The position numbers and the translations under genes were made by a program. From Octopus bimaculoides (taxonomy: Eukaryota), in the NCBI RefSeq assembly GCF_001194135.2, contig NC_068981.1:173769644-173833643 (forward strand): 64,000 nucleotides of DNA, given 5' to 3'. Positions 8,253 to 31,640 of this stretch are shown here, in pieces. The stretch's first letter is position 1. Each line of letters opens with the position of its first letter. A model generated the notes under the pieces. The model was not told the DNA's origin. It saw nothing but the letters and a program-made list of their open reading frames with translations, and searched no databases.

Positions 8253-8821
8253 GATATGTTTATACGTACATTTGCTAAAAAAATTATAATGGTGTGTCCT
8301 GTAATTTGAAAATCTATATGGTCGTATGCATCCGAGAGTGGTCTACTTCAAATTGATGTAATGTCTTCATTGATTGATTAGCTTGCAATGCTCGTTGCAG
8401 CAGAAATTTTTGTAAGCTAATAAAGCTCATTGCATAATTTCCTGTTCCCTTGTCTTTTGTGTATTCTCATTCACATGTGAAGGAAATTTTTGTTTTTATT
8501 TATAGGTCAAATAGACCATGAAAATCATTTTCTTTAATAGGTATCCATGTTTCTGTTCCTCTTACATGAAGTTACAAGAATCTTCCGAGAGAAATATTTA
8601 TGTCCACCACAGTAACTCATTTTTCTCACTCAATCTAGCTTATCAAACTAATCACAGTAGGACCCCTTTTCAATGACCACAACACACAGTATGAATCTTT
8701 GTTACCTACTCTTTGTCAACCACCACCACACATAAATAAACATTTCAATGATCAAGAATAACAACAAATTTTACTACTGTTGTTTCATTATTAACAATTA
8801 TTTCACTTTCAATTTCAACAG

Positions 8822-9560
8822 GCCAATTATTCGGCAAGCAGCAACTCCTCTAACACCCTATGAAACAGAATATTTACAACCTTATCTTGCATTTCCCAGA
8901 AACTATGCTTGTTATCCAAAGGAGAAGGATGTACTAGGTGCTAGCTTTCATGATGGAAACATACCAAAATATCTATATATTGCTAAGTTCCCAGGGCATC
9001 AAAATCTGACGACAGCTTTATGCATGATTACTCAAACAATACTTAGCAATATTGAGGAATGGGATGAACATACACTTGATCGGATTTTGGTCAACGGATG
9101 TAAATTACATGAAAAATGTCTGAAGAGACGCCAAGCAATAAATGATGCATATTCATTAGAAATCCGGCATTTACCAACATTTATGGTATATGATAATTCA
9201 TGCACATTTCAAATTGTATATAGCAACCCAACATATGGGAATATAATGAGTGACTGTAAAGGTACTGAAAAAAGGAAGACTTTGTATAATGCATTGAGTA
9301 GTGCATTCTTTCAAAGAATTCATGGTGTGATCTTAAAAATGCAAGGGTTTGCTATGAGTATAGTTCGTCATAAAGCATCAATTTTCTATCTATTCGATAG
9401 CTTTCCAAAAGATAACATTGGCAGATTTGATCGATTTGGTACGGCCAAATTGCTTAAATTTTGTCACTTGAAAGCACTTGCGAAATACATAGAGAATGAA
9501 TTTTTGTGGGCACTTCCATTCACGTTAGTTTCTATCCGAATGGTACGCATAAATTTATGA
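8822..9560 (+). CDS. Terminal exon encoding a herpesvirus tegument deubiquitinase-like (peptidase C76/VTD-type) domain, apparently catalytically inactive
   Basis: Uninterrupted ORF 8748-9560; ttcaacag acceptor at 8821. Motif order ASFHDG..FPGHQNLTTAL..W....LDRIL.NG.KLH..LP..G..GVIL...GFAMSI..FYLFDSFPKD..GTA.LL.F follows the C76 fold. AATAAA at 9716-9721. Assignment is by-eye. Confidence 0.72.
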
Positions 9561-10121
9561 AATCATAACAGATGAAGTAATTCTTAAATCATAAAACCAG
9601 TGACTCACATTTGGATGGTATGCACAAACCTATGGACTCATTACAGACAAATATTTATTATTTAAGAAAAAAAAATAACTCACCTATACTCCCCATAAAA
9701 AAAATGTACTAATGTAATAAACATTGGAAGAAAATGTTGACATAAAAAAAGTGAACTGTATATTACCTTTGTTTATTTTCACATGACTCTTGTTGTTCAA
9801 AGCTGCACTCATCATACATATTGAGTACTCATTTCAACTATGGTCTTTCCAGTCCATAAGTGATAAAACTACACACATGCATGCATGGTGTGTATGTGTT
9901 TGTAATTATATATATGTTGCATGCACACACACACACACACACACATACATGCATGGTTGTGTAGTTAATTAGTTTGCTTCCCAACCACATGCTTTTGGAT
10001 TCAGTACCACTGTGTCGTACTTTGGGGAAGTGCCTTCTTGCTATAGCCCTAGGCTGGCCAAAGCCTTGGGAGTGCATTTGGTAGATGGAAACTGAAAGAA
10101 CCTCATCGTATATTTGTATAT

Positions 10122-13767: not shown

Positions 13768-13836
13768 TCAAATGGAAGTTGGAATCATGTTTAAGTTGAT
13801 CAAATGCCGCATAGTTGGACGACCATGAGGGCAATT
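13768..13836 (-). CDS. PMS2: PMS2 terminal exon 21 (NCPHGRPTMRHLINLNMIPTSI*)
   Basis: CPHGRP zinc motif; tttcag acceptor; TGA stop at 13770-13768; an AATAAA follows at 13746-13741. Confidence 0.97.
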   Translation of the reverse strand, partial: NCPHGRPTMRHLINLNMIPTSI

Positions 13837-14491
13837 CTGAAATATATATAATATAATAATCAGAATATATAAAGTAATGAATATTAGTGAAAAAAATTAA
13901 ATACAAACATTATTTTTTTAAATTGGTGATGGGGGTAGTGTTGATTATGATCAGTGTCCTAAGAGTTCATTTGCTCTATCTCCGAAGACAGAGGTGCAAC
14001 ATTTTTTCTGGATCAACTTTTGACTCTTCCAACCAGGAAAAAACAGGTATTCATTCTGTTAACTTTCTCAGTAGGTTAAGACTGAATTTGAACTTAAGGT
14101 TTTAAGACATTGAAATAAGTGCCACCATTAGAGTTATTAAAATTAGGAAACAAAACTGAGTTGTGGGCTTGGTTCTCTGAGAGTGTGCCACTACTCTATG
14201 ACACTTGAATTGCTTCACAAATCAATATTTTTGCTCAGGTTACACAGTCTTTTATGTAAGAGGAAGTTGCCTTGTCAAACCAACTCCATTATATTAATGG
14301 TACTACAAACTGTGGAAAGATGATAGGTTAAATTGTGGGTAAGTGACATTTGAAACAAACCAGATACGATACTAAACTAAGTACCAAAAAATATCTAGTC
14401 TTGCATGCTACCAAATATTCAAACCCTGTATAAGATACAAATTTAAGTTAAATTATAAAACAATTTAAAATTACACAATGCTTAAACTTAC

Positions 14492-14527
14492 CCATGGTTG
14501 GTCAAGTTCTGACATGTGACAGATGAG
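14492..14527 (-). CDS. PMS2: PMS2 exon 20 (LICHMSELDQPW)
   Basis: tcacag acceptor and TGG|GTAAGT donor; 36 nt. Confidence 0.93.
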
Positions 14528-15285
14528 CTGTGAATATGAGAAAGGAAAGTGGGATTAACAAAAACTGAATTCAATTGCATATAAAAAAAAACACAAACAA
14601 AAATATGTGAGAGGGAAAAAAGGGCTGTTTTCAATTGCTATTTCTTTTAATGTTCTAACAATGGATATTCTGTAATTGTCTTACAATGCTATGCTTCATT
14701 ACTAACAGGAGAATTATGTGAGGTCACAAGAGTTTTGTGCACAAGCGTGCTGATAAAGGGAGGATGAAATGACATTGACAGTCAACAACTTCTATGTTTG
14801 GACAATAACTCCTGGAAATTAGAGATTACAATGAATATCATGCTGTCAATGTTTAATGTCTATAGCTTGTGGTTTTACATGTAACTGTATTTAACATCCA
14901 TTTATCCACGTTTTAGACTATTCATCAAATTTATATTTTCAATAGTTGTTGGATGTGATAATTTTTAGAGTTAGAGGTTTCCTAACACTTATAGTTGTTT
15001 AAATTACTAGGTCGATAAAGTAATTATTGAACTGTGACTTCAGGTGTCGTCATTTCAAATCTACAGATATTTCATTGTATTTTTGCAATTTGCACTTAAT
15101 TTAAAATGCCTCCATTCATTTAGTTATTAGGAATAGGTAATAGATTTTCTGAGAATATTCCTAACAACCTAGGGAAGTGCTGGATGTAATCAGCCTCAGA
15201 AAATTATGTAGGTATTTTTTAATACAAAGTCTTAGGAAAATCTCAACTGTTGATAACAGAACAGAATAGGAACAATATTGTATAC

Positions 15286-15390
15286 CGTTTTCATTTCTCT
15301 TTTTTTGAGAGCAGTTCCAATCATTATTGATTTGCGACAGGCACGAGAAGCAAACATCTGACATATACGGGATGGACGGCACATGACACC
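15286..15390 (-). CDS. PMS2: PMS2 exon 19 ([35 protein letters not shown])
   Basis: ACR zinc motif and [10 protein letters not shown]; tgttag acceptor and ACG|GTATAC donor; 105 nt. Confidence 0.97.
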
Positions 15391-16028
15391 CTAACAAAAT
15401 AAACAAGATATATTCCAAAGATTTTTCAAAATTATATTTCAATCAGTTTCATTTTTTTATTCATCCTTAAGCAAATAAATTTAATCAAAAAGATTAAAAT
15501 AGCACACACACACCACAATCTCAAATTGTTATTTCTCTCTATCTATTTTACAAATCCTCAATGAAATGTGATGATATAATTACAAATATAATTTACTGAC
15601 AGGAACCTTTTATCTACATAATCCTAAAGAAAACACTGTCTTAAGAATTCTTGCAGTTTGAGTTGTCAACTATCAACCAAATGCCATCCCATCCAACATA
15701 GATGAACAACCACCTCCATTATAATTGTCAACCTCTTTCCACTTTCATTGACCACCAATATAATGAAATAAATAATGTTATTGGTTCATAGGACACATGC
15801 ATCTCTGCACTCTTTCATGTTGGTAACCATGAACACCAAAGCAGTCAATTACAGCCCGATAAGAAAGAATTCATTCTTACAGTAGGATGGCATATGGTAT
15901 GTTTGTGGGCCATCTAGGAAGAGGATTTTCTCCCGGGGCTATTTTCACAGCGAATGTACTCAACTGTGTTAAATATGGCTTTACATGAAAATTAAATTGA
16001 TAACAAAAAGATTCATAAAATTTCTCAC

Positions 16029-16066
16029 CGGAAAATCTGTCAGCATGAAAATAAGTTCTTCAATAT
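16029..16066 (-). CDS. PMS2: PMS2 exon 18 (DIEELIFMLTDFP)
   Basis: Matches vertebrate DVDELIFMLSDSP; ttttag acceptor and CCG|GTGAGA donor; 38 nt. Confidence 0.93.
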
Positions 16067-17254
16067 CTAAAATAGACATAAGAGAAAACATACAGGATTG
16101 TTGCTATTCTTGTTGTCATGTTTAATGTAAGGTGTGTGCTGTAGCTAACCACTTTACATCCATTTTAATGCGTGTGTGTATATGTTTGTGTGGAGTGTCT
16201 TTGTGCCTGTGTTTGTCCCCCACCACTGCTTGAAAACTGAACCGGTGTTGGTGTGTTTATGTCCCCATAACTTAGCAGTTCGGCAAAAGAAACCAACAGA
16301 ATAAGTACTAGGGTTAAAAATAAGGAAAAAAAAAAGCCCTAGGGTCAATTTCTTCAACTAAAACCCTTCAAGGTGGTGCCCCAGCATGGCACAGTCAAAT
16401 GAATTAAATAAAAGATAAAAGATTTACATATTCTTCAAGTATGTCATGGGTGCAGATATAGCTGTGTGGTTAAGAAGTTTGCTTTGCAACCATGTGATTC
16501 CAGGTTCATTCTCATTGCACAGCATTTGGACATTTATGATAATGAGAATAACAAGGGAGCATCTGTACAACTTGGGCAAAACAAATATCACAAGGAATTT
16601 CATTTCAAAAGTTCTAGTTTATAGGTTTCTCATGGTTCCAAGTTGATCCCACTGCACAGTACCTTGGTAAGTGTATATTACCTTAGCTTCTTGTTGATCG
16701 ATACCTTATGAAAGGAGTCTCATAAATAGAAACTGAGTAAATGCTCATTGTGTGTGTCTGCAACTTCTTGCTGAAAAAACTGCACAGATGATTTGATTAT
16801 AGTGAACAAATGTTTATGCTGTACAGTAGCTCATTCCCTCCATCAAATCGACATTCTATGTTCAGGTGCACAGTGTGCTATACACCAACTGTGGAAGTGA
16901 TCACAAAGCAACATGAAATGAAGTGTTTTGTTTAAGAACATGACACACCAACTAGTCACGGAATCGAAGGTACAATCTTGTGAACGTGAGTGCAGCACCA
17001 TAACCACTAGGCCATGCACCTTCACATATACACACAATGAGCTTTTGTAGAGTTTCCATCTATTAAACTCTACTCATAAAGCATTGATCGAGGTGCTATG
17101 CCACAATAGGATCAACTTATAATCACGAAAAACCTATAAACAGATACTCACTCATTTGTTTGTGAGCTGGAGGATATCCTGAATTCCATTTGTTAATCAG
17201 TTGAGAAGCAGCTCTTCTGCTCATTAGTGTATTAATTGCAGATTCTGACTTTAA

Positions 17255-17474
17255 CCCTTTAGCATTTAAACCAACCATATCTAGATGAAATATTCAACTT
17301 GTTTTATGCTCAAACTGATCAGATCCAGCTACTCACATCTACCCTACAATGTCATTCTAAAAATAAACAATCACATCATCAAAATCTCAAAGGTATGAGA
17401 TAATGCATGATTAATTGAAAGCAATATGGATTAATAAGTATTACAATTGGCAGAGTAATCTGAATGCTAAAGGG
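17255..17474. mobile_element. piggyBac-like MITE, copy A
   Basis: TTAA-CCCTTTAG ... CTAAAGGG-TTAA termini; internally similar to 12243-12463. Confidence 0.85.
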
Positions 17475-17737
17475 TTAACAACATTTGAACCTAATACACC
17501 AAGCTAACAAAATTCTTGTCAAGCATTGGTACCCCACAGTCTCTTTCAAATAGATTTATTTCCTTGTAATGTCTATTTATACTATGATTGAATGAACATT
17601 AATATAAACTGTTGGTCTCTCAACTAATAAACTAACATTGTACTGATCCAAATGAAACTGACTCACAATTCCATTTGGTTCAGTAGGATTCAACCGGAAT
17701 TGCTTCCAAGTATTGACACATTATTAGAAACACTTAC

Positions 17738-17907
17738 CTTCTTTGCCAAAATTCCAGTTTTTACTCACAGGTGCTGTTTCCAGTTTCACTCGCTGACCTG
17801 GTACAGCAGATTCATCAATTATAAAGCTGAAGCCATTTCGGTTGAAAATCTCAATACTATTGAGAAGAATAATTTCATTGCTTGCAGTTAATTCCAAAGG
17901 CTGAGGA
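17738..17907 (-). CDS. PMS2: PMS2 exon 17 (PQPLELTASNE...NGFSFIIDE...SKNWNFGKE)
   Basis: Regulatory subdomain; taccag acceptor and G|GTAAGT donor; 170 nt. Confidence 0.96.
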
Positions 17908-18172
17908 CTGGTAAAACAATATGGGAATAATAAAAGTAGTTGTAGTGGTAGTAAAAAGGGTTGAATATATTTGAAACATGAATAAAAATTTTAAAGTTTT
18001 CAGGTCCTTAGAGAAATATGTGTCCAGACTACTATAGGTGTAGTCATAGCCATGCAGTAAAAAGTTCAGTCACATTGTGTGGTACCTCGGGCAGCAGCCT
18101 TCTACTATAGCCCCAGGTCAATCAAAGCATTGTGGGTGGATTTGGTAGCCAGACACAGGTTGAGAAACCTGT

Positions 18173-18227
<55 letters not shown>

Positions 18228-18967
18228 TACTGTCTCCCTTGCCTTGACTTCATGTGGAACTTGTGAATGACTGTCACCAACATGTAAGTGGTGTTCATTT
18301 CCAATCTTCTGTAAAAACATGTCTGATCATGGGCAATATTACCTTACTTGGAAAGAGGTGAGGGTTAGTGATAGGAAAGGCATCCAACTGTAGAAAATCT
18401 GCCTCAATAAATCCAGTCAAATGACTGAAACAAGTAAAAGATAGAAGATATAAAAAATCAAGTCCAGCTCTCTGCTTCTCATCAGCAGTATATTGATCAA
18501 TCAACAATTTCTAACATTGATCTATATTAGAAAAATGGTATAGACAAATAAATCAACCACAGAACTTGACTTTTATTTACCTCAGCAGAATTTGAACTCA
18601 GAATGTAAATGCATCTAAATTCTGCAAAGTTATTTTGTCCACTGTAATATAGATTCTACCATCCACTGCCCTTCCACAGTCACTCATTTTGAAGGAGGGG
18701 GTACAGTCAATTTTACAGCCTCCAAATGCATAACATATTTTATCAACATTAGAAAGATGAAAGGCCAAGTTAACCCTGGTTGGATTTGAACTCAGAATGT
18801 CAAGGGACCTAACTGAATACTTCAAGGCATTTTGTTCAGTGTTCTACTGATTCTCTCTTCCAAAGCTTTTCAAATGATAAAATAACAGTAATTTTAGCCA
18901 TCAATTCTACTATACAGTTATTATTATTTGTTGGAGAATAAATTAGGTAGGTCAGTTATTTGCTCAC

Positions 18968-19098
18968 CGAATCAATTTCTGGCCTTGCATTACTGTGTTT
19001 TTCCGCAATTTCTCAAAATTATATTTTTCATCAGTAGCATGTTGATCCACAATGAATAAGTCCTCATTTAATCGTGTGATGATAAAGCCAAGGTTGAA
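18968..19098 (-). CDS. PMS2: PMS2 exon 16, endonuclease motif ([24 protein letters not shown])
   Basis: Intact DQHA(X)2E(X)4E metal-binding motif; tttcag acceptor and CG|GTGAGC donor; 131 nt. Confidence 0.98.
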
Positions 19099-19840
19099 CT
19101 GAAAGAAGTTTAAAAAACAGCATAAATAATGTTTTTATATGTGTGTGCATGCATTTGAATGTGTGTAAATGTGTGTGCATTGATGTGCAAATATATGTGT
19201 AAATGTATGTGCGTGTTTGTGTGCATGCATACCAGTTTCCACAATGAGTATTCTGGGTGTTTTAATCAATGAAACTACATACTGAATCACAGTGCAAGTA
19301 TGTATATATTCCATCCAAACATTAGTACCCTTAACATAATTCTCAAGCATAAGTACAAACTTATACAGTTCAAAGTGCTGAGATTTAATTCCAGCCAAAA
19401 TTGGTTGAATTCTGTCATTCTTTAATGTAAAAAGTTATTATTTGAAACATTCTGAACATCCTAAAATAAACTATGGGACAGAACAAAACAAAAATTTTGC
19501 TAGAAACAAAACTGTCATATCATTCAATTGTAGCTCCTTTATCAAGAAGCATTTTATTTCTATCAAATTTAATTTTACTGAATTTATTGAAACATTTTTC
19601 AATCCAACAAAGGATAGTTTTAAAATATGCTAAATGTATAACTAATGAATGCATGTAATTAGCAGAAACACTTCCACAAAAAAATACATGGAATATTCAG
19701 AGGCGAAAATGCTTCTATATAACAAAGACACATTCCAGTATACTCTGATAACTCCAGGATACCTCTTATACCTGCTACAGGTGATGAATAAAAGGAGTAT
19801 TTTATAAACAACAACCAATAAAGATAATCTCAAAATTTAC

Positions 19841-20065
19841 CTGTCCCAAGATTTCCATACTTTTAAACATACTTTTGTCAATTTGTTTAGCAAGTTCTTC
19901 CTCAGCTGATTTATTTTCACTTGGAGAAATTTTTGCTCGAAAGTTGCGACAAAGATCTTTGGAAGTATTCACTTTGTGTTCTCTATGTAATTTTAGTTTC
20001 TGACGGAGGGAATCCATAGAAAATGGCACGGTTGTTTCTTTTCTAAATATCTCTGACTCTTCATC
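19841..20065 (-). CDS. PMS2: PMS2 exon 15 (..PFSMDSLRQ..NFRAKISPSENKSAEEELAKQIDKSMFKSMEILGQ)
   Basis: FRAKI.P.EN..AEEEL...I.K.MF..MEI.GQ is PMS2-specific; poly-T tract plus cag acceptor, CAG|GTAAAT donor; 225 nt. Confidence 0.97.
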
Positions 20066-20397
20066 CTGAAAAAAAAAAAAAAAAAAAAATTGAAATTAAA
20101 AAATAAGATTGGGGGTGGGGTTCCATCCAACAAAGGATGGTTCTGGAAATTAGCATGAATTACTAAAAAAAGTAATTTTTATATTTGGATGATCTTATTC
20201 CTAACCATTCAAGAACTGTACAGTGTGGTTGGTATCTATGTTAGTTGTGCAGCTTGAGGTAATTAGATTAAAATACCTAAGAGGCTCAATACAAATGCTA
20301 CTGTGATGTTTCAACTTATGACTACTGTTACTTATCTTTCCTCATTGATTTGTTATTATTTGAGACATTTCCTGCATTATTCTTATAATGTGAATCA

Positions 20398-20693
20398 GTA
20401 GGAGTGGCTGTGTGGTAAGTAGCTTGCTTACCAACCACATGGTTCCGGGTTCAGTCCCACTGCGTGGCACCTTGGGCAAGTGTCTTCTACTATCGCCTCG
20501 GGCCGACCAAAGCCTTGTGAGTGGATTTGGTAGACGGAAACTGAAAGAAGCCTGTCGTATATATGTATATGTATATATATATGTATGTGTGTGTCTATGT
20601 TTGTCCCCCCAACATCGCTTGACAACCGATGGTGGTGTGTTTACATCTCCGTAACTTAGCGGTTCGGCAAAAGAGACCGATAGAATAAGTACT
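20398..20693 (+). mobile_element. tRNA-derived SINE family A (young copy, runs into gap)
   Basis: A-box tggctgtgtggtaag, B-box ggttcagtcc, ccttgggcaagtg core, (TA/TG)n middle. Confidence 0.9.
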
Positions 20694-21371
20694 NNNNNNN
20701 NNNNNNNNNNNNNNNNNNNNNNNNNNNNNNNNNNNNNNNNNNNNNNNNNNNNNNNNNNNNNNNNNNNNNNNNNNNNNNNNNNNNNNNNNNNNNNNNNNNN
20801 NNNNNNNNNNNNNNNNNNNNNNNNNNNNNNNNNNNNNNNNNNNNNNNNNNNNNNNNNNNNNNNNNNNNNNNNNNNNNNNNNNNNNNNNNNNNNNNNNNNN
20901 NNNNNNNNNNNNNNNNNNNNNNNNNNNNNNNNNNNNNNNNNNNNNNNNNNNNNNNNNNNNNNNNNNNNNNNNNNNNNNNNNNNNNNNNNNNNNNNNNNNN
21001 NNNNNNNNNNNNNNNNNNNNNNNNNNNNNNNNNNNNNNNNNNNNNNNNNNNNNNNNNNNNNNNNNNNNNNNNNNNNNNNNNNNNNNNNNNNNNNNNNNNN
21101 NNNNNNNNNNNNNNNNNNNNNNNNNNNNNNNNNNNNNNNNNNNNNNNNNNNNNNNNNNNNNNNNNNNNNNNNNNNNNNNNNNNNNNNNNNNNNNNNNNNN
21201 NNNNNNNNNNNNNNNNNNNNNNNNNNNNNNNNNNNNNNNNNNNNNNNNNNNNNNNNNNNNNNNNNNNNNNNNNNNNNNNNNNNNNNNNNNNNNNNNNNNN
21301 NNNNNNNNNNNNNNNNNNNNNNNNNNNNNNNNNNNNNNNNNNNNNNNNNNNNNNNNACGATTCTGAAACAA

Positions 21372-21411
21372 TTAACCCTAACCCTAACCCTAGGGTTAGG
21401 GTTAGGGTTAA
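21372..21411. repeat. 40-bp perfect palindrome of telomeric repeats (CCCTAA)3/(TTAGGG)3
   Basis: ttaaccctaaccctaaccct|agggttagggttagggttaa, centre between 21391 and 21392. Confidence 0.97.
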
Positions 21412-21908
21412 AGCAAATTTAAAATGAAAAAAGCAAATAAAACGAATCGATGGAGATTAAATATGCTTTACATCGCTTAATCAGCCAAAGGAGTAAATGT
21501 AAACAACTGAATACTTGTCAGTGATTGGTTGAAATTATCGAAATAAGACAATTTTTTACATGAAATAAATTCGAATACAAAAATATTTTTCTGTTCTATA
21601 ACACAAAATAGATAAGTATACGAAGTTTGAAAGTCTTTCCGTACCAAAAACACTACGTAAAACATTAATGAAAAATGTGGCCCCCGTTTTAAAATAGATC
21701 CCAATCATCTACTATTTTCAATGTGATCACAGAACACATTAAAACACAATGTATTTAGAGTGTTTGATTCGTTGGTTCTCTCAAGTTTTTGGTTGACCTT
21801 CCTCTGTGCCACAGCCCTACCCATATGGAGCCAACAATAATATTATAATAGTTGTATAGACTTCACTATTATGGTTTCTCAAATAAAGGTATATAAATGA
21901 TAACTTAC

Positions 21909-22375
21909 ATATTTTGTAATCACTTCACTCTTTGTCACCATTTCTCTTTCTGTCTCCTGTTCTTGTAACTCAGAAGCTTGTGATTGTGATTCTTCACTTT
22001 TAACACTGGCTGTATGTCCTTCAGGTGAAGAACTATGGTAATAAACTGATAGAGAGGAATGGGATTCTGTTTGGCTTTGTGAAGATTCAGGTTGACTGAG
22101 AGACAATCCTGAATCTGAAACAGGCTCAGTTTCATTAGATGAATGGAATGAGGCTGTGTCTTCATTTTGTACCTGTTTACAATGTTCGCCTTGAGAAATG
22201 TCTTTGAAAGTAAAAGAAGAATCCAGAAATGGTTCACTATACGTAAGTTTCTTTGGAGAACTTCCGTCAGATTCCACATTTTCATTGTCATCTTGTGGTT
22301 TTCTTTTCAGCCATCTTGAAAGACTGTTTAACGATTGAGCTTTCTTTAAAGTTGGTGTAGAGCTTGATAATTTTT
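21909..22375 (-). CDS. PMS2: PMS2 exon 14, large Ser/Glu-rich disordered linker
   Basis: 467-nt open frame within ORF 21879-22454; tttccag acceptor and TAT|GTAAGT donor; phases fit neighbours. Confidence 0.88.
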
Positions 22376-22765
22376 CTGGAAATAAACCAAAAAGCAATGT
22401 TATTTTCCTAGTTAGAGACACTGAAACTTGTAAGCCTCGTCCAAAAACAAACACTTTTTTCTTTTATTCATTTTAGAAATGAAGAGCTATTGAGTGTAAT
22501 AAAAAGTAAAGACAAGGATTTATGCATTCTAAGAGACCTTCAAGAAAACAAAGTTCTCAAAAGATAAATTTCTCAAAGTTGAAATAAGTATCATGTGGGA
22601 AATTACAGTAGTAACAATACCAATAATAATCAGAGCACTAAAAATGATAAAAAGAACCTAAAAACAGCAGAACTTGCAACTTTATACTCAATACAAAGTA
22701 TAGCTTTGGTAACCATAAATATTCTACAGCATCTTCTCAGTAGGATAATTAACACAATACATTCT

Positions 22766-23156
22766 TTACTCTTTTACTTGTTTCAGTCATTTGATCGCAA
22801 CCATGCTGGAGCACCGACTTTAGTCAAGCTAACTGACCCCAGGACTTATTCTTTTGTAAACCTAGTACTTATTCTATCGGTCTCTTTTGCCAAACCGCTA
22901 AGTTACGGGGACGTAAACACACCACCATTGGTTGTCAAGCAATGTTGGGGGGACAAACACAGACAGACAAACACACACACACATACATATAGACGACGAG
23001 CTTCTTTCAGTTTCCGTCTACCAAATCCACTCACAAGGCTTTGGTCGGCCCAAGGCTATAGTAGAAGACACTTGCCCAAGGTGCCATGCAGTGGGAATGA
23101 ACCTGGAACCATGTGGCTGGTAAGCAAGCTACTTACCACACAGCCACTCCTGCGCC
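22766..23156 (-). mobile_element. SINE family A, full-length
   Basis: Reverse complement of 20398-20693 plus 3' tail gtcaaatgactgaaacaagtaaaagagt. Confidence 0.9.
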
Positions 23157-23644
23157 TTTGCATATAAATATATAACAAAAACAGCATACTATATATACCC
23201 TCTTAACCCTGTCGACCTAAATACACTAAATTAGCAGGAACCTGACAAGAAAACAATACTGTTCACATTGAATGCTTAAATGCTTGAAACGAGTTACTGT
23301 AATTAAGATTATAATTTTCTAGACATTTATACTATTGTATTTAAACCCCACTTTGATCAGTTCACTTTCCAATTATCTGGATCTAAACACTTGATGACGG
23401 AAAAAAATAAAATAATAGAAACTTGCTGCAAGGCAAGCACACAACAGGGGAGATCTTCAGAGGAAGGACTCCCATCCAACAAATGTTTCAGCCCTTTTAC
23501 CTAACACTCTATGGGAGCCTGGCCCACCTAGGTCATGACTCCTAGGTGTCCTAAGAGCAGATATCAAAATATAGCATAGATATAATATGTAATAAAAATT
23601 TACTATAAAGATGAGGTGAATAGCAAAGAAAAATTATAATCTGA

Positions 23645-23922
23645 GTAAAGAATAAAAAGTTTAGAATGGTACAACAATGCACTATAAAACAAAAAATGGA
23701 CTATATACCTGTTGTAATTTGGTTATCTATAGTCCGATGATATTTCGGAATTACAATTCCTTTTTCAGATCTTCTTAGATGGAGTCCCCATCTAAGGAGA
23801 CCTGAAGAAGGAATTGTAATTCCGAAATATCATCGGACTATAGATAACCAAATTACAACAGGTATATAGTCCATTTTTTGTTTTATAGTGCATTGTACCA
23901 TTCTAAACTTTTTATTCTTTAC
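23645..23922. repeat. 278-bp near-perfect foldback (arms about 135 bp, loop about 5 nt)
   Basis: Left arm gtaaagaataaaaagtttagaatggtac...cttagatgg is the reverse complement of right arm ccatctaag...gtaccattctaaactttttattctttac. Confidence 0.95.
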
Positions 23923-24224
23923 AAACAATACACAATGCTTCAAGTGAACCACAATACTTTCATAATCTGAGTATTATTGATACTTGACGAACACAAGAAG
24001 GTGTATTGTTTGTTACAGTGAAAAACACTCGCAGGAAACCATAGAAAAGAATTAGTATTAACATCAACAGAACAATATAGATAAGACAATAACATTTATT
24101 TTATAAATAATAATGAATTAGATTTGGATTAAGTTTTAAATGTTTAAAAAATAGCTTTAATAAATAGCTTTAGATGATGGTGACGATGATAATAATGATG
24201 AACTCTCAAGTAGAAGACAACATA

Positions 24225-24465
24225 TGAGTGTTCAGTCTTTGCCAAACGACCTGCTCAAATGATTTTGTTTATGGTGATCAAATGTATATGCTGTACATTA
24301 GCTCACTCCCTCCATCAAATCAATGTTGCTTGAACAGGTGCACGGTGTACCACATGTGATGGTGTTGAATTGACGAGGTGAAGCATTTTGCTGAAGAACA
24401 CAACGTGCCACCCAGTCTAGGAATTGAAACCATGACCTCAAGATCATGGCGTAACACCCTAATTA
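24225..24465 (-). mobile_element. SINE family C (second copy at about 16760-17025)
   Basis: Shared tagctca(c/t)tccctccatcaaatc..caggtgcac..gaagc/tattttg..aagaaca, and a tRNA-like head with B-box on the minus strand. Confidence 0.7.
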
Positions 24466-25048
24466 TGATAATAATAATAATAAGACCAAAACAAAGTCTG
24501 TTTATTGAGCAACATGAGCATTCTTTGTGATCATAATATCTAGGCAAAACAATTTGACAAGCTCAGAAAATATAATGATTTGCTCATTGAAATTGAAAAA
24601 ATGTGACATCTCAAGACAGTTACAATACCAGTGATTATAAGAGTACTTAGAAAGATCAAAAAAGGAACTGAAAATTATTTGAGAATGATCCTTGGCTTAC
24701 CATCTATGCAAGAAGTGCAAAAGATTGTTTTAACTTGTACGTCACATGTATTAAGAAGAACATTGTCACTGTGAATTTTCTTTCCATTTTTTCTTTGTTT
24801 TCTTTTTTGTCAATTTTTTTCTTTTTCCTCCCTTTTCTGTCTTTCTTTTTTCCCCTTTTTTTTCTATCACATAACTTGACTTTATAAATGAAGAATCTGG
24901 GATGTTTATTTTAATGGCCTACTAATGTGTACAGTGATTTTCTTTGCCCTAAGTGTCAGGATGACACTCGGCAAGAAATGGAAACAAGATTGAAAAAAGA
25001 AAAATAACAACAACAATAATAAAAATAATAATAATGTAGCATACATAC

Positions 25049-25134
25049 GTTTTTCATTGTAAAATTTCATAAGGCTTGATGGTGTATTTTCATGAGAATG
25101 ATGGTTTAAACCAGATGAAGGGGAAGACATTGAC
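25049..25134 (-). CDS. PMS2: PMS2 exon 13, linker (SMSSPSSGLNHHSHENTPSSLMKFYNEK)
   Basis: accag acceptor and C|GTATGT donor; 86 nt, phase 2 to 1, bridges exon 12 to exon 14 in frame. Confidence 0.72.
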
Positions 25135-25605
25135 CTGGTTAAGTTGCTAAGTAATTTACTCGGTGTCTATATTCCAGAGATAAAATAAATAAATAAATAA
25201 ATAAATAAATAACATGATGGTTTTGGCATCACTTTTAGACAAAGCTCTTTACAAGAAAATAAATGGTTTGAGTGGATTAGAATCAATAACAAAAGTGATG
25301 ATATATAAACATTTCCACCAAATAAGTGGTCGACATAACTGAGAAAAAAACCTCTGCTAGCAAAATTGTTAACACATCAGGCAAAATACTTAGCAGCATT
25401 TCATCCATCTATGTTCTGAGTTCAAATTCCACTGAGGTCAACTTTTTTTGCATTCTTTTGAGGCCAACAAAATAAGTACCAGTACAACACTGGGGTCGAT
25501 GTAATCGAATTACCCTCTCTTCTGAAATTGCTGGCCTTGTGCCAAAATTTGAAATTATTTTATCCACCTATCTGCTTGTTATTTTATATCTATTTTTATG
25601 TAAGA

Positions 25606-25910
25606 GGCGTAGGAGTGGCTGTGTGGTAAGTAGCTTGCTTACAAACCACATGGTTCCGGGTTCAGTCCCACTGCGTGGCACCTTGGGCAAGTGTCTTCTT
25701 TTATAGCCTTGGGCTAACCAAAGCCTTGAGTGGATTTGGTAGACGGAAACTGAAAGAAGCCTGTCGTATATGTGTGTGTGTGTGTATATATGTGTATNNN
25801 NNNNNNNNNNNNNNNNNNNNNNNNNNNNNNNNNNNNNNNNNNNNNNNNNNNNNNNNNNNNNNNNNNNNNNNNNNNNNNNNNNNNNNNNNNNNNNNNNNNN
25901 NNNNNNNNTA

Positions 25911-25950
<40 letters not shown>

Positions 25951-26060
25951 TGTGTTTGTCCCCCAACATCGCATGACAACCGATGCTGGTGTGTTTACGT
26001 AACTTAGCAGTTCGGCAAAAAGAGACTGATAGAATAAGTACTAGGCTTACAAAGAATAAG
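25606..26060 (+). mobile_element. SINE family A
   Basis: Same head and core as 20398; (TG)n tract broken by a gap. Confidence 0.9.
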
Positions 26061-28893
26061 AGATGGCTTTTGTTGGAACAAATTATTTTTACAACAGGAC
26101 ATACCTTACAGATAACCACTAAGTCACAAATCCATGCAAATGTGGATTCATAGACAAATGGTTAATAGTAAGGTTGAAATTAGACTTGGTGTTAGGCAAG
26201 AAAACATGCAAGTAGATGCTTTTGCTTTGCTCACAGTCAGAACACAATGGCTATAGTATACATTGAACTTAAAGCTACGTGGTTCATAATCCAGTACTCT
26301 TTCCTAGACACAAAGAGCCACATGTCAGCTCTGACATGTAGGTAGTTGATCAAATATCTATGTATGACAAGTCTATTGTTCAAGATTGTATTTCTTAGCC
26401 TGGTATATCATGTTCAGGACCAATTCCCCTAGTATTCCAGTCATTTTTAAGACTACACAGAGGCTATTTCATTGGCTCATCTTAACTCTACATTGTTCCC
26501 TGAATGATGGACTTCATACTAGTATCACAAAACACATGAAAATGAGACTGACGCGATTATTGATTATAGCTAGTCAAAGACATTCTCAGTGGGTTAGGGT
26601 ATAAATTGAGATAATAAAGGAATGCAACTAAATACAAGACATTAAATTAATAATGTCAATATTTATGAGACAGGTGTAAATACTACAACTACATATTTTT
26701 ATAAGTTGGGAAAGTAATGAGAACTGATACCTAGATACTTTCCCAAGAGAGGCTATAACACCATAGCAAACTATATATAAAATGTGAGCATTAAAAGATG
26801 CGAGGATTGAAACAAAACATAAAGACAGGGAAAGAGGGAGAGATATGACAAAGAGAGAAGGGTAAATTGGTATATTAGTATATATAATCATCATCATCAT
26901 AGTTTAATGTCCATTTTCTTTTGCATAGAGTGGACAGTTTCACAAGAGTCAATGTTTTGTCATAGTTTCTACAGTTAGATACTCGTCTTAATGCTCACTG
27001 TTTTATAGAGTGTACCGAATGCTTTTTACATAGCACCAGCACTAGTGAGGTCACCAAGTAACTTGCAAGACAAGACCCATCAACAAAATGGGGTATAGTA
27101 CTGAGGGAAGTGGCTTTATATCAGATGATGAGTGGTTAAAGTATGAGAGAGGGTCAGGAAGAGGTATCTTACTGAAGAGAAGATACATGGCTACCCCAGT
27201 TGGAAAAGCAAGAAAATGGTAAAGGTGTGTCGGGGCATACCCTTAAGTGACAGGAAGGTGAATATAAATGGAGTTGTACAGAAGATTGGATAAAGTGAGT
27301 GGGTAGATTAGTAAGTTTGCATGAATGCTACAGGAGAGTAGCAGATAAATTATCTTGGACAGATGGATAGATAGACAGATATATAAGAAACCTGCCCTGT
27401 TTTGGTAATTTCTTTCGTACTTTTAATCCTCATCTCATAGCACAAAGCTGCTTCCTTGGAGGTAGTCTTACAAGCTGTATTGTGACCTCACTAGTGTTGA
27501 TGACAGAGAAAAAACATTCAATACTTACTGTGATGTGGTTGGCATTAGAAAGGGTATCCAACCATAGAAACCACACTAAAGCAGACACTGGAGCGCTATG
27601 CAGTTCTTGAGCCCATAAGTTCTTGTCAAACCACCCAAACAATGCCAATATGGAACATGGACATTAAGCAATGATGATGATAGACAGATATACATATTTA
27701 TAGAATGAGGGAGAGAGAAAAGCTTGTACATCAACTCTTGAGCAGTAAATTTGATACAAGAAACTAAACTGATAATATATTATGTACATACCTGCTTAGG
27801 ACTTGACAATTCTTTTTCACAACTGTGAATAAATTTTTAAAAGTATTATTTGAGGTGGTGCTGAAAAGTTCTTAGCTTTGGGTGAAAGAAAATACAGGAG
27901 GATCAGTTAATTATGATTTTATTCAACATATTCCCAGAAATAAAGAAAGAGCTAGGCTCCTGGAGTTCTATTATGCTTATAACCTTTTAATCTGCAACAC
28001 CAACTTCAGGAAGCCCAGCCAGCCACCTGATAACCTATCAATCAGGTGACTCAGCTAGCCAGATTGATTTCATTCTCACCAGACAGCGGGATGCATGATT
28101 ACTCTTAAATACAAAGACCCTCCCTGGTGAAGAATACACCCATCCTTGTCATGCCTGCATAGACATAAATAATGATAATTGAATAGATTGCGCAAAGATT
28201 ACTGAATATCATGTATCTAATATTTGGAAATTTTGTTTGTATAATAGACAAAAACTAACAATAGATATTAATATAAGTTTGTCAACTATAAAATAGAAAA
28301 AATCCAACAACTGTCCCTACTTACTGTCAATACCTATAGGCTGAAACTTCACTTCTTGTTAGTGGATAACGATTGTAAGTAAGCATGGACATAGTTGAAA
28401 ATGTAACTTTTATCAAAAAGAAACAAACATTATTCTAAAGGACTGTATCAAGTGACATGTTGTATGCCAAAACAAGCCATACATGCCAAAATATAGAACA
28501 AGTATTAAATCAATGATGCGGAAATGTTATGTAAAAATGTTTTATGCAAATTTTATTATTGTTGGTATCAGTTGGATGAGTTTGTAACAGCTAAATTCTA
28601 CATATCCCACTTCTATATTATTTTCTCTATGAGGCCCATATTACATATAAACATAACAGGCAAATCAAGTGAGTAAATGACATAAGTTAAAAATTTGTCA
28701 GTAATGAATTTTATAAAAGACACAGGTATGGTTGTGCAAATAAGAAGCTTTTTTTTTTTTTTGCAATCACATGGTTTTGGATTCAGTTCAGTCCAACTGT
28801 ATGGCACCTAAGGTAGATCTCTTCTATTTAAACTTTGACTTGACTAATACCTTGTGAATGAAATTAGTACAGGGAGACTGTGCAGAAGCCTTT

Positions 28894-28927
<34 letters not shown>

Positions 28928-29274
28928 TATGTTAGTCGTTACATAGACACCATTTGAAAAACACAGTTTCTGTTTATGTCTCATTACTTAGCAGTGCAAC
29001 AAATAGAGATCACCAAGTGCCAGACTTAAAAATAAGTATTGGAACCAATATGATTAATTAAAGTCTTCAAGGTGGTGCCCAGGCATGGATACAGTTCAAT
29101 GACTAAAACAAGTAAAAGTAAATAGAAAAAAGTTATAAGAGTGATAATTCTTAGAAAACTGACAGCTTATTTCGTGTTATTAGTGGTACTGGATGCTGTT
29201 CAAGATAGTAATATATTTTCTTTTTAAATAATGAACAAGAATAAAAAAGACAACAAAAATTCAAGACAGCTTAC

Positions 29275-29320
29275 CTTTCATTAAATTCTCTCTCATGTTT
29301 TGTATCAAAACTTAACTGAC
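29275..29320 (-). CDS. PMS2: PMS2 exon 12, linker (QLSFDTKHEREFNE)
   Basis: Strong tttcag acceptor and AG|GTAAGC donor; 46 nt, phase 1 to 2; open frame. No motif support because the linker is variable. Confidence 0.7.
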
Positions 29321-30892: not shown

Positions 30893-31019
30893 CAGGGTGT
30901 CCACAAGGTCTGGGTACATGGAGTAAATAAAATCATAACATAAACAATTAAATATAAGAAATAATAATTTCTTAAAGTATGTGTTAATCCCCATGTACCC
31001 AGACTTTGTGGACACCCTG
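30893..31019. mobile_element. Tc1/mariner-type MITE, 127 bp
   Basis: TIRs cagggtgtccacaa(g/a)gtctgggtacatgg of about 29 bp with 1 mismatch; TA on both flanks. Confidence 0.93.
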
Positions 31020-31579
31020 TATATAATCACATATCCTGCTTAGTGTAGCAGTCAAATCTACTTTAACATGAGGGAACCTGTATGTCATGTGTTTTACCAG
31101 AAATAACCTACTCTCATAAAACAATAAAGCAATCAAACAAAGGCAGGATGGTTAGAACAGGAATGTCTGATCTGCTCCATCAAAGCTGACCTACCACTAA
31201 ACAACAAATTCAATACACTTTATATCAAATGGTGACATGTATTAAATCTAAAGTGTTAGGAAATTATGTCCCACAATAAAAGCAGGATGACCATGGCTAG
31301 AACACTTACTCAATGATGTATATGATTGATTACTTTTGTGTTACAGCAATACATGAAGTTCCTAAAATCACTGGATTTTAGACTTTACTCTTCCTGCTCA
31401 AACAGGAGCTGACCTTAACTCCCAATAATAACTATTTGGTCACACAGTTCATTACCCTTTATCTTCATCATACATCATTATAGCCACTTCTAACATCTGG
31501 CATTTTGCAAGGAGGTTAAGCAAATTAAAAATACTAGAATTTCAAGATCAATACTAAGAAATTAACTCAACTGCATTAC

Positions 31580-31640
31580 CTTTCATAGAAATACTTGTAC
31601 AAATAGCAGACGTTGGTTCATAAAGTGCCAACAGTGAAGC
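31580..31640 (-). CDS. PMS2: PMS2 exon 11 (ASLLALYEPTSAICTSISMK)
   Basis: tttcag acceptor and G|GTAATG donor; 61 nt, phase 0 to 1; occupies the position of vertebrate TSLIGMF. Confidence 0.85.

What the first reader, a model, noticed from the sequence alone, without database searches (positions are those of the whole stretch)
8822..9560. Intact, spliced herpesvirus-tegument-like deubiquitinase gene with both catalytic residues replaced (candidate domesticated pseudo-DUB)
Seen: a 245-codon frame with no stops or frameshifts, a clean acceptor (ttcaacag, 8821) and AATAAA (9716), while all neighbouring transposon ORFs are decayed. Established: herpesviral large-tegument DUBs (peptidase C76; EBV BPLF1, MCMV M48) use a Cys in F-x-G-x-Q-C and Asp/His in FYLFDPH, and related VTD-type DUBs occur in animal Helitrons and some host genes. 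By-eye alignment to recalled BPLF1: LGTASCNQ/LGASFHDG, FAGIQCVSNCV/FPGHQNLTTAL, LDEVLDEGARL/LDRILVNGCKL, FYLFDPH/FYLFDSF, YTCVHL/FTLVSI. The Cys position is Asn and the His position is Phe. Inference: a virus- or transposon-derived fold kept by selection as a non-catalytic ubiquitin/NEDD8-binding or structural protein, convergent with PMS2.
Basis: partly seen in the sequence, partly recalled or inferred. Interest (0 to 1): 0.8.

Follow-up and report, generated by a model that had tools for sequence, protein, structure and literature searches.

The report
Conserved inactive tegument-like deubiquitinase gene
This is the main exon of an octopus gene, already in the databases but uncharacterised, whose protein has the fold of a herpesvirus/transposon-type ubiquitin-cleaving enzyme, has lost its catalytic residues, and has nonetheless been kept almost unchanged by selection next to the PMS2 repair gene in deeply separated lineages.

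Summary
Window 8822-9560 (+) is an intact terminal coding exon of 245 codons plus a stop, behind a conserved AG acceptor. Its translation is identical to Octopus bimaculoides LOC106867659, which UniProt auto-names 'Peptidase C76 domain-containing protein'.

The protein belongs to the VTD (viral tegument-like deubiquitinase) fold:
- Pfam Herpes_teg_N scores above its cut-off.
- A confident AlphaFold model matches the Helitron VTD structure 8ADD, the MCMV M48 structure 2J7Q and 26 herpesviral large tegument proteins.

The active site is largely replaced in every orthologue. Cys is Asn (Ser in one lineage), His is Phe or Tyr, and the conserved upstream Gln is Asp. The acidic pair that binds ubiquitin's tail in the Helitron enzyme is Arg-His. 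No cysteine is invariant.

It is not transposon cargo. It is single copy, has no Helitron genes nearby, and shares intron position and phase across lineages. It lies tail-to-tail with a PMS2-like gene in Octopus, Argonauta and a second, deeply diverged clade. dN/dS is 0.015-0.087, and that second clade yields spliced transcripts.

The best reading is a domesticated pseudo-enzyme that works by binding. Binding ubiquitin in the canonical way is untested and looks doubtful. It is a new, mollusc-lineage member of a kind already described in insects (inactive VTDs).

The parts
8814..8821 (+). 3' splice acceptor (ttcaacag) of the last intron. The intron is phase 2 and splits a Trp codon.
   Evidence: Read directly. 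The same acceptor context is seen in O. vulgaris, O. sinensis and Argonauta hians. The same intron position and phase is seen in the second clade, unspliced L005 versus spliced L006.
8822..9560 (+). Terminal coding exon of LOC106867659. It comprises the last base of the split Trp codon, 245 codons and a TGA stop, and encodes residues 19-263 of the 263-aa protein.
   Evidence: The translation is identical to XP_014768078.1 residues 19-263.
8919..9542 (+). VTD / peptidase C76-like papain-fold domain (protein residues 51-258).
   Evidence: hhalign of the cephalopod profile against the non-cephalopod VTD profile gives probability 99.9% and E 2.4e-31 over residues 51-258. Pfam PF04843 scores 26.8 bits against a cut-off of 25. 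Foldseek finds 8ADD at E 3.9e-15 and 2J7Q at E 5.9e-13.
8952..8954 (+). Asp62 codon, at the family's conserved Gln column (the H-Q-G motif upstream of the nucleophile).
   Evidence: Relatives have Gln in 20 of 23 aligned domains (HMMER) and 47 of 53 (MAFFT). All cephalopod orthologues have Asp.
9003..9005 (+). Asn79 codon, at the catalytic Cys column. It follows the conserved Gln78 and sits at the N-terminus of the central helix.
   Evidence: The model's helix spans residues 79-92. The residue is Asn in Octopus, Argonauta and L006, and Ser in L004.
9165..9170 (+). Arg133-His134 codons, at the columns of the acidic pair (D376/E377 of DrT1-VTD2) that binds the R-x-R tail of ubiquitin.
   Evidence: Pairwise alignment to 8ADD. 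Family columns are mostly Asp/Glu. The role of D376/E377 is taken from PMC9741609. The pair is invariant in all cephalopod orthologues.
9396..9404 (+). Asp210-Ser211-Phe212 codons, the remnant of the family's Asp-x-His motif. Asp is kept and His is replaced.
   Evidence: In 119 aligned domains of relatives, Asp occurs in 96 of 99 and His in 55 of 100. In the MAFFT alignment His occurs in 52 of 62. The residue is Phe in Octopus and Argonauta and Tyr in the second clade.
9716..9721 (+). AATAAA, a candidate polyadenylation signal 156 nt after the stop codon.
   Evidence: Read directly. The flanking 3' sequence aligns to O. vulgaris up to about 9873 at 95% identity. Its use was not tested.
13777..46397 (-). 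PMS2-like (MutL homologue) gene, convergent (tail-to-tail) with the VTD-like gene. It is the conserved neighbour.
   Evidence: tblastn with the 869-aa MutL-type ORF of L006 finds 14 exon matches in order on the minus strand. Pfam finds HATPase_c_3, DNA_mis_repair and MutL_C in that ORF. The same arrangement is present in L001, L003 and L004.

Best explanation
Window 8822-9560 is the last and main coding exon of a bona fide host gene, Octopus bimaculoides LOC106867659. The gene arose by domestication of a VTD-type (viral tegument-like, peptidase C76) deubiquitinase domain, most plausibly from a transposon lineage such as the VTD-carrying Helitrons.

The protein keeps the whole papain-like VTD fold but cannot work as a thiol protease. 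The nucleophile Cys is Asn or Ser, the general-base His is Phe or Tyr, the conserved upstream Gln is Asp, and no cysteine is invariant among orthologues. It therefore acts as a pseudo-enzyme, doing its job by binding rather than cleaving.

The acidic pair that grips ubiquitin's C-terminal tail in the active Helitron enzyme is an invariant Arg-His here, and the loop equivalent to the ubiquitin-contacting hairpin is the least conserved part. The most likely mechanism is therefore a re-purposed interaction surface. Candidate parts of it are the former cleft, the invariant L-E-I-R-H-L-P-T segment, the conserved N-terminal extension and the conserved C-terminal E-N-E-F-L-W-A-L-P-F segment. This surface would recognise a partner other than ubiquitin's tail in the canonical S1 mode.

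Shown: fold, residue replacements, orthology, synteny, purifying selection, and splicing and transcription in one clade. Inferred: transposon origin, non-catalytic binding function, and the change of ligand.

The confidence of 0.55 is for the whole statement including the changed ligand. For the narrower claim, a domesticated and catalytically dead VTD-fold host gene under purifying selection, my confidence is about 0.9.
For: Identity: the exon translation equals XP_014768078.1 residues 19-263.

Fold:
- Pfam Herpes_teg_N scores above its gathering cut-off for the Octopus protein (26.8 bits) and the Argonauta protein (32.9 bits).
- phmmer against the PDB finds 8ADD at E 5e-4 with the single sequence, 2.4e-6 with the cephalopod-only profile and 7.7e-33 with the family profile. 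The family profile also finds herpesviral large tegument proteins and M48USP.
- hhalign gives 99.9% probability.
- The AlphaFold2 model has pLDDT 88.6 and pTM 0.86.
- Foldseek finds 8ADD (TM 0.82), 2J7Q (TM 0.73) and 8ADB/8ADC, and 26 herpesviral large tegument proteins at E <= 3e-9.

Loss of catalysis: column counts are.

Host-gene status:
- There are three coding exons with GT-AG introns, conserved between Octopus and Argonauta.
- The same phase-2 intron is present in the second clade.
- There is one copy in the window.
- Only two close clusters appear among 1.84 billion representatives. The next hit is at 25% identity.
- No long transposon ORFs lie in the compact Argonauta locus.
- A PMS2-like gene lies tail-to-tail in the window, L001, L003, L004 and on transcript contig L006.

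Selection: dN/dS is 0.015 for O. bimaculoides vs O. vulgaris (16 synonymous, 1 non-synonymous difference). It is about 0.06 for Octopus vs Argonauta and 0.085 within the second clade. Synonymous sites are saturated between the clades, yet 113 of 245 residues are invariant.

Transcription: spliced contigs come from two independent sequencing runs (L006, L007).

Precedent: inactive, non-transposon VTDs in insects and domesticated VTDs in flies and nematodes (PMC9741609).
Against: - No functional or binding data exist.
- Expression in Octopus itself was not examined here. Only RefSeq models exist, and the upstream exons are outside the window.
- The structural model is a prediction, and I could not inspect its coordinates. 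The geometry of the former active site and any compensating residues were judged from alignments only.
- One lineage has Ser at the nucleophile column.
- The retained, nearly family-invariant Asp210 and invariant His61 and His134 leave a small chance of unconventional chemistry.
- The loss of ubiquitin-tail binding is inferred from two aligned columns and one paper's mutagenesis of a distant relative.
- The donor element is unknown, because no tree was built.
Confidence: 0.55

Rival explanations
1. A non-catalytic ubiquitin or NEDD8 receptor or decoy. On this reading the dead enzyme still docks ubiquitin or a ubiquitin-like protein in the ancestral S1 site, and shields or reads ubiquitin signals instead of cutting them.
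For: - The whole VTD fold is kept with high model confidence.
- All characterised VTDs act on ubiquitin (PMC9741609).
- Structural residues around the cleft (Gly76, Gln78, Trp98, Gly110, Phe209, Asp210, Gly218, Gly224) are kept.
Against: - The two acidic residues that bind ubiquitin's R-x-R tail in DrT1-VTD2 align with an invariant Arg-His pair, which is a charge reversal.
- The segment aligned to the ubiquitin-contacting hairpin or loop (residues about 159-172) is the least conserved block, with 1 of 10 residues invariant, and has the lowest model confidence inside the domain.
- No binding test was possible.
Confidence: 0.25
2. Still an enzyme. The protein would hydrolyse some bond with non-canonical residues, for example Ser or Asn with Asp210 and another His.
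For: - Asp210 is invariant.
- One lineage has Ser at the nucleophile column.
- His61, His101, His114 and His134 are invariant.
Against: - Three of four lineages have Asn, which is not a nucleophile, at that column.
- No Cys is invariant anywhere.
- The His column holds Phe or Tyr.
- The conserved Gln column holds Asp.
- In DrT1-VTD2, single replacement of any triad residue abolished activity (PMC9741609).
Confidence: 0.05
3. Unselected transposon cargo or a young pseudogene that happens to be still open.
For: - The window is full of decayed retroelements.
- VTD domains are carried by Helitrons in molluscs (PMC9741609).
- Some relatives are highly multi-copy. The cluster of P0106 has 183 members.
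Against: - dN/dS is 0.015-0.087 in every unsaturated comparison.
- The ORF is intact in eight sequences from at least six species or lineages.
- The intron, the neighbouring gene and the orientation are conserved.
- There is one copy in the window.
- The cluster holds only four sequences, from three named Octopus species plus one unnamed sequencing run.
- No Rep or helicase ORFs are nearby.
Confidence: 0.02
4. The locus is conserved for an RNA-level or regulatory role tied to PMS2, through convergent and possibly overlapping 3' ends. On this reading the protein would be incidental.
For: - The tail-to-tail pairing with PMS2 is kept in all lineages examined.
- On transcript contig L006 the two stop codons are only 460 nt apart, and the two mRNAs were assembled into one contig.
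Against: - The excess of synonymous over non-synonymous change shows selection on the amino-acid sequence itself.
- In Octopus the two stops are 4.2 kb apart with a retroelement fragment between them, so overlap is not general.
Confidence: 0.05

Closest known systems
Insect inactive VTD (iVTD) proteins, e.g. Drosophila CG32436, CG4669, CG14402 (Erven et al. 2022, PMC9741609)
   Same: They have the VTD fold, lack one or more active-site residues, lie outside any recognisable transposon and are host genes. In my own alignment many insect domains also carry Asn, Ser or Thr at the Cys column and Tyr or Gln at the His column.
   Different: - This is a different phylum (Mollusca, cephalopods).
- It is a short single-domain protein of 263 aa, not a multi-domain protein of 1500-2100 aa.
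- It is only 22-31% identical to the insect proteins.
- It has a deeply conserved single-copy orthologue with fixed synteny.
- Its expression pattern is unknown, whereas the fly genes are testis-specific.
Helitron-encoded VTD, DrT1-VTD2 of zebrafish (PDB 8ADD)
   Same: It is the best sequence and structure match in the PDB. It shares the same fold and the same conserved framework motifs.
   Different: - 8ADD is an active K48/K63/K11 deubiquitinase with Cys322, Asp451 and His453 and the Asp376/Glu377 tail clamp. Here these are Asn, Asp, Phe and Arg/His.
- 8ADD is part of a Rep/helicase transposon protein. Here the domain is a free-standing spliced host gene.
Herpesviral large tegument protein N-terminal deubiquitinase/deneddylase (peptidase C76; MCMV M48USP, PDB 2J7Q)
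   Same: It shares the fold (Foldseek E 5.9e-13, TM 0.73). 26 herpesviral homologues are matched in BFVD, and Pfam assigns the same family, PF04843.
   Different: - Sequence identity is only 12-20%.
- The viral domains are active and sit at the N-terminus of tegument proteins of 2000-3000 aa.
- Nothing else herpesviral is present at this locus. Descent from a herpesvirus is neither needed nor supported.
Domesticated active VTD genes: Drosophila ms(3)76Ca and nematode VTD genes (PMC9741609)
   Same: They are single-VTD-domain host genes derived from mobile-element VTDs and are conserved within a clade.
   Different: Those genes keep all catalytic residues and are active (K48-directed in the fly). 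The cephalopod gene has lost them.

Membership tests
VTD / peptidase C76 fold family (Pfam PF04843 Herpes_teg_N) | Significant profile match over the domain | tested here: met
   - PF04843 scores 26.8 bits (cut-off 25) for the window protein and 32.9 bits for the Argonauta orthologue.
- hhalign gives 99.9% probability.
- PDB profile hits to 8ADD, M48USP and large tegument proteins.
- My scan did not reach E 0.001 for the second-clade proteins P0078 and P0105, although the precomputed annotation lists PF04843 for P0105 and for P0003, the representative of P0078's cluster.
VTD / peptidase C76 fold family (Pfam PF04843 Herpes_teg_N) | Papain-like alpha/beta fold superimposable on solved VTD structures | tested here: met
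   The predicted model has pLDDT 88.6. Foldseek finds 8ADD at E 3.9e-15, TM 0.82, rmsd 3.0 A, and 2J7Q at E 5.9e-13, TM 0.73. The model is predicted, not experimental.
Active VTD deubiquitinases (enzyme class) | Catalytic Cys following the conserved Gln at the start of the central helix | tested here: not met
   The residue is Asn79, or Ser in one lineage. No Cys is invariant.
Active VTD deubiquitinases (enzyme class) | Invariable Asp-x-His motif (PMC9741609) | tested here: not met
   The motif is Asp210-Ser211-Phe212 in Octopus and Argonauta, and Asp-Ser-Tyr in the second clade.
Active VTD deubiquitinases (enzyme class) | Acidic residues binding ubiquitin's C-terminal R-x-R motif (D376/E377 in DrT1-VTD2) | tested here: not met
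   These align to an invariant Arg133-His134 pair.
Active VTD deubiquitinases (enzyme class) | Cleavage of ubiquitin chains or probes | not testable with these tools
   No biochemical data are available.
Inactive, non-transposon VTDs (iVTD sensu Erven et al. 2022) | VTD domain lacking one or more active-site residues | tested here: met
Inactive, non-transposon VTDs (iVTD sensu Erven et al. 2022) | Located outside a recognisable transposon context | tested here: met
   - The gene lies between a Fe-ADH gene and a PMS2-like gene in Argonauta.
- It lies next to PMS2 in Octopus and in the second clade.
- No Rep or helicase ORF is found in the 8.4-kb Argonauta interval.
Inactive, non-transposon VTDs (iVTD sensu Erven et al. 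2022) | Phylogenetic closeness to the insect iVTD / Helitron VTD branch; testis-biased expression | not tested
   No tree was built and no tissue expression data were examined. The closest named relatives by phmmer are insect multi-domain proteins at 25-31% identity.
Helitron cargo gene | Physical linkage to Rep/helicase and multi-copy dispersal | tested here: not met
   - There is one copy in 64 kb.
- The 90% cluster holds four sequences, from three named Octopus species plus one unnamed sequencing run.
- No linked transposon ORFs are present.
- Whole-genome copy counts could not be made.
Domesticated (exapted) mobile-element gene | Syntenic orthologues, intact ORF, purifying selection, transcription | tested here: met
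   - Synteny.
- Intact ORF in eight sequences, with dN/dS 0.015-0.087.
- Spliced transcripts in the second clade.
- Transcription in Octopus itself was not examined.

The most novel reading that the evidence does not exclude
The pseudo-deubiquitinase and PMS2 form an ancient, functionally coupled gene pair in coleoid cephalopods. On this reading the dead VTD fold has been re-tooled, through a charge-reversed former ubiquitin-tail cleft and a conserved N-terminal extension, into an adaptor that recognises a non-ubiquitin partner in germline or DNA-repair biology. This would parallel the male-germline bias of fly and nematode VTD genes. The convergent, in one lineage nearly overlapping, 3' ends would couple the expression of the two genes.
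Probability: 0.1. Interest if true: 0.7.

Novelty: new member of a known kind. Interest (0 to 1): 0.42.

Why it matters
Pseudo-enzymes derived from mobile-element or virus-like proteases are a recurring but poorly understood source of new host genes. This case is unusually clean.
- It is a short, single-domain, single-copy gene.
- The catalytic Cys, the catalytic His and an upstream conserved Gln are replaced, and only the Asp remains. The ubiquitin-tail clamp is replaced as well.
- Even so, it evolves under dN/dS below 0.1 across lineages whose synonymous sites are saturated.

It extends the inactive-VTD category from insects to cephalopod molluscs. It also gives a tractable example for asking what a dead deubiquitinase fold is kept for. 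The fixed pairing with PMS2 offers a concrete lead that expression data can check. It is not a new fold, not a new principle and not a virus remnant of concern.

Tried and rejected
- AlphaFold2 on the five cephalopod sequences alone gave an unusable model (pLDDT 33.5). It was replaced by a 66-sequence family alignment.
- I searched the window for the gene's upstream coding exons, for both isoforms, by tblastn, blastn and exact six-frame peptide search. None was found. They lie beyond the window start or in an assembly gap.
- NCBIfam gave no hit.
- The weak Pfam hits Imm64 and MAP65_ASE1 are below their cut-offs and were dismissed.
I used tblastn with the L006 MutL-type ORF instead.
- I could not name the organisms behind the second clade (runs SRR8281675/80 and SRR7369732, assembly ERZ21867824). 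Two paper searches found nothing relevant, and the exact look-up of the PMS2-like ORF was not in the collection. The idea that they are decapodiform cephalopods therefore stays an inference.
- Literature searches for the locus names and for tegument, deubiquitinase and cephalopod together found nothing. The supplements of Erven et al. do not mention octopus.
- The word-indexed protein search found few relatives even with a 29-sequence profile. The exhaustive search was the useful one.
- I considered and rejected a herpesviral integration. Nothing else viral is at the locus, and the best matches are transposon and insect VTDs.
Full report
**1. The observation**

The + strand between 8748 and 9560 is open for 270 codons.
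- Base 8822 completes a split Trp codon.
- 8823-9557 encodes 245 residues and is followed by TGA.
- AATAAA is at 9716-9721.

With the local base composition, about 0.002 such open frames are expected by chance in the window. The translation is identical to residues 19-263 of Octopus bimaculoides XP_014768078.1 (LOC106867659 isoform X1) and to isoform X2. It differs by one residue from the O. vulgaris/O. sinensis protein. So the window is O. bimaculoides and the gene is already annotated as 'uncharacterized'. UniProt auto-names it 'Peptidase C76 domain-containing protein'.

**2. Gene structure**

In O. vulgaris, O. sinensis and Argonauta hians the RefSeq-type models have three coding exons with GT-AG introns. 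These are a 5-codon first exon, a 13-codon second exon ending TG|gt, and the large exon beginning with G. The acceptor context is nearly identical in the three Octopus species and is recognisable in Argonauta. The two small exons, and the alternative first exon of isoform X2, are not in this window. The window has a 10-N gap at 8095-8104 and a decayed LTR-type retroelement upstream, so they lie beyond the start or in a gap.

**3. What the protein is**

Sequence evidence:
- Pfam Herpes_teg_N (PF04843) matches above its curated cut-off, at 26.8 bits for Octopus and 32.9 bits for Argonauta.
- The only PDB sequence hit of the single protein is 8ADD, the Helitron-encoded VTD domain DrT1-VTD2 (E 5e-4).
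- A profile of cephalopod orthologues alone improves this to 2.4e-6.
- A profile that adds 25 distant relatives hits 8ADD at 7.7e-33, three herpesviral large tegument proteins at 1.5e-14 to 2.1e-7, M48USP (2J7Q) at 7e-6 and the bacterial Wc-VTD1 at 5e-4.
- hhalign of the cephalopod profile against the non-cephalopod profile gives 99.9% probability over residues 51-258.

Structural evidence:
- AlphaFold2 failed with five sequences. With a 66-sequence alignment it gave pLDDT 88.6 and pTM 0.86.
- Foldseek then ranks 8ADD first (E 3.9e-15, TM 0.82), then 2J7Q (E 5.9e-13, TM 0.73) and 8ADB/8ADC.
- In the viral library, 26 herpesviral large tegument proteins score E <= 3e-9.

The fold assignment is therefore secure.

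**4. The active site**

Erven et al. [quoted passage not shown] In DrT1-VTD2, replacing Cys322, Asp451 or His453 abolishes activity. The table gives the octopus residues at these columns. Counts for relatives come from 119 aligned domains of 72 distant relatives (HMMER) and from an independent MAFFT alignment.

| Column | Relatives | Cephalopod orthologues |
|---|---|---|
| Catalytic Cys | Cys in 20 of 75 (HMMER); 37 of 55 (MAFFT) | Asn79, or Ser in one lineage |
| Asp of Asp-x-His | Asp in 96 of 99 (HMMER) | Asp210, kept |
| Catalytic His | His in 55 of 100 (HMMER); 52 of 62 (MAFFT) | Phe212, or Tyr in the second clade |
| Conserved upstream Gln | Gln in 20 of 23 (HMMER); 47 of 53 (MAFFT) | Asp62 in all orthologues |
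| Ubiquitin-tail clamp (Asp376/Glu377) | mostly Asp/Glu | Arg133-His134, invariant |

From general knowledge of the M48 enzyme, the conserved upstream Gln is the oxyanion-hole residue. That role was not verified here. The paper shows that Asp376 and Glu377 are needed for cleavage and for recognising ubiquitin's R-x-R tail. No cysteine is invariant across the orthologues. A thiol-protease mechanism is thus excluded for the orthologous group, and the canonical tail clamp is charge-reversed.

**5. Host gene or transposon cargo**

- *Copy number.* There is one copy in the window. The exhaustive search of 1.84 billion representatives finds only two close clusters (self, and P0003 at 49% identity). 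The next hit is at 25% identity. The 90% cluster holds four sequences, from three named Octopus species plus one unnamed sequencing run. A distant relative's cluster, by contrast, has 183 members.
- *Context.* In Argonauta the gene spans 4 kb between a Fe-ADH gene and a MutL-type gene on the opposite strand. That interval has no ORF over 105 aa other than the gene itself.
- *Synteny.* A PMS2-like gene (HATPase_c_3, DNA_mis_repair, MutL_C) lies tail-to-tail downstream in four places: the window (exon matches from 46397 down to 13777), Argonauta, O. vulgaris and the genomic contig L004 of the second clade.
- *Selection.* Nei-Gojobori dN/dS on the 245 codons is shown below.

| Comparison | dN/dS | Note |
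|---|---|---|
| O. bimaculoides vs O. vulgaris | 0.015 | 16 synonymous and 1 non-synonymous difference |
| vs a further Octopus species (L008) | 0.06-0.07 | |
| Octopus vs Argonauta | about 0.06 | dS about 1.2-1.3, near saturation |
| within the second clade (L006 vs L004) | 0.085 | |

Between the two clades synonymous sites are saturated (pS about 0.8) and dN is 0.40. Even so, 113 of 245 residues are invariant.

- *Transcription and splicing.* Contigs L006 and L007 come from two independent runs. They carry the coding sequence joined across the same phase-2 intron that is still present in the unspliced contig L005 of the same species. L006 also carries an uninterrupted 869-aa PMS2-like ORF on the other strand, so it is a cDNA-type assembly.

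None was met. Two gaps remain. Octopus tissue expression and whole-genome copy counts were not available, and model coordinates could not be inspected.

**6. How it most likely works**

Shown: a complete VTD fold without a nucleophile, general base, conserved Gln or tail clamp, under strong protein-level constraint.

Inferred: it acts by binding. Conservation between the two clades is as follows.

| Residues | Invariant | Feature |
|---|---|---|
| 129-138 | 8 of 10 | segment with Arg133-His134 |
| 239-248 | 8 of 10 | start of the C-terminal E-N-E-F-L-W-A-L-P-F stretch |
| 29-38 | 7 of 10 | N-terminal extension preceding the VTD core |
| 49-58 and 59-68 | 7 of 10 each | start of the VTD core, including His61-Asp62 |
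| 159-168 | 1 of 10 | loop region |
| 79-88 | 2 of 10 | helix after the former nucleophile |

By alignment to 8ADD, the loop at about 159-172 corresponds to the loop or hairpin that contacts ubiquitin in M48 and is required in DrT1-VTD2. It is also the lowest-confidence part of the domain in the model.

I therefore favour a re-purposed interaction module with a changed ligand (confidence about 0.55) over a canonical ubiquitin/NEDD8 receptor (about 0.25). Residual enzymatic activity, unselected cargo and a purely RNA-level role are unlikely.

**7. Comparison with what is known**

Erven et al. describe VTD domains in Helitrons of vertebrates, insects, cnidarians and molluscs. They also describe inactive VTDs (iVTDs) in insects outside transposons, with testis-specific expression in Drosophila, and domesticated active VTDs in flies and nematodes. 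The octopus gene works like an iVTD and meets two of that group's features: loss of active-site residues and a non-transposon context. It is in another phylum, is single-domain and short, and has a deep, syntenic orthologue series. I found no paper in the held library that mentions it. It is a member of the VTD fold family, but it is not a member of the active deubiquitinase class, because the defining catalytic features were tested and not met. Nothing at the locus points to a herpesvirus. A transposon donor is the economical inference but is unproven.

**8. Verdict**

The finding is real and correctly interpreted. It is moderately interesting as a new, mollusc-lineage member of a known kind.

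Noticed in passing
window 13777-46397 (-): A multi-exon PMS2-like mismatch-repair gene, with 14 tblastn exon matches in order and a long Ser-rich linker exon at about 21882-22463. It fills half the window and ends 4.2 kb from the stop of the VTD-like gene.
   Followed up: partly
L006 1259-1719 (transcript contig, run SRR8281680); also L007: In the second clade the stop codons of the VTD-like mRNA and the PMS2-like mRNA are only 460 nt apart on opposite strands, and the two transcripts were assembled into one contig. The VTD-like 3' UTR reaches at least position 1498. The 3' ends therefore abut or overlap. In the related genomic contig L004 the two stops are about 3.7 kb apart.
   Followed up: partly
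window 3849-7458 (+): A decayed LTR-type retroelement sits in the last intron of the gene. Only an RVT_1 fragment is recognised by Pfam. The pol region is interrupted at least three times (at least two frame changes, plus stops in the RNase H/integrase part). The exact count was not determined.
   Followed up: partly
window 10463-11835 (-) and 52429-53716 (-): Two non-LTR-type reverse-transcriptase fragments (RVT_1, weak zf-RVT). Each is split over several overlapping short ORFs in different frames, with at least three interruptions in the first. The first lies between the VTD-like gene and PMS2, and part of it is also present in the O. sinensis locus.
   Followed up: partly
window 9954-10121, 20398-20693, 22759-23165, 25605-25795, 41360-41742 and others: Many copies of a repeat of about 400 bp (SINE-like). 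It is also present several times in the O. vulgaris and O. sinensis loci at about 87-89% identity.
   Followed up: no
window 60289-61461 (+): The longest N-free ORF in the window (390 aa). It is rich in Ser, His, Lys and Glu, with a poly-His run, and has no Pfam match. It may be an exon of a low-complexity nuclear protein.
   Followed up: no
window 926-1636, 8095-8104, 20694-21356, 25798-25908, 47117-47331, 51548-52081: Assembly gaps (runs of N). The 10-N gap at 8095-8104 lies 0.7 kb upstream of the exon. It may hide intron sequence or the missing small exons.
   Followed up: partly
P0112 (O. bimaculoides XP_014768079.1): A second annotated isoform uses a different first coding exon (16 residues) spliced to the same acceptor at 8821/8822. 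The VTD-like domain is therefore constant and only the extreme N-terminus varies.
   Followed up: partly
The precomputed annotation lists PF04843 for the second-clade proteins P0105 and P0003 (the representative of P0078's cluster), but my Pfam scan of P0078 and P0105 found no family at E <= 0.001. The clade sits at the edge of what the Pfam model detects.
   Followed up: no
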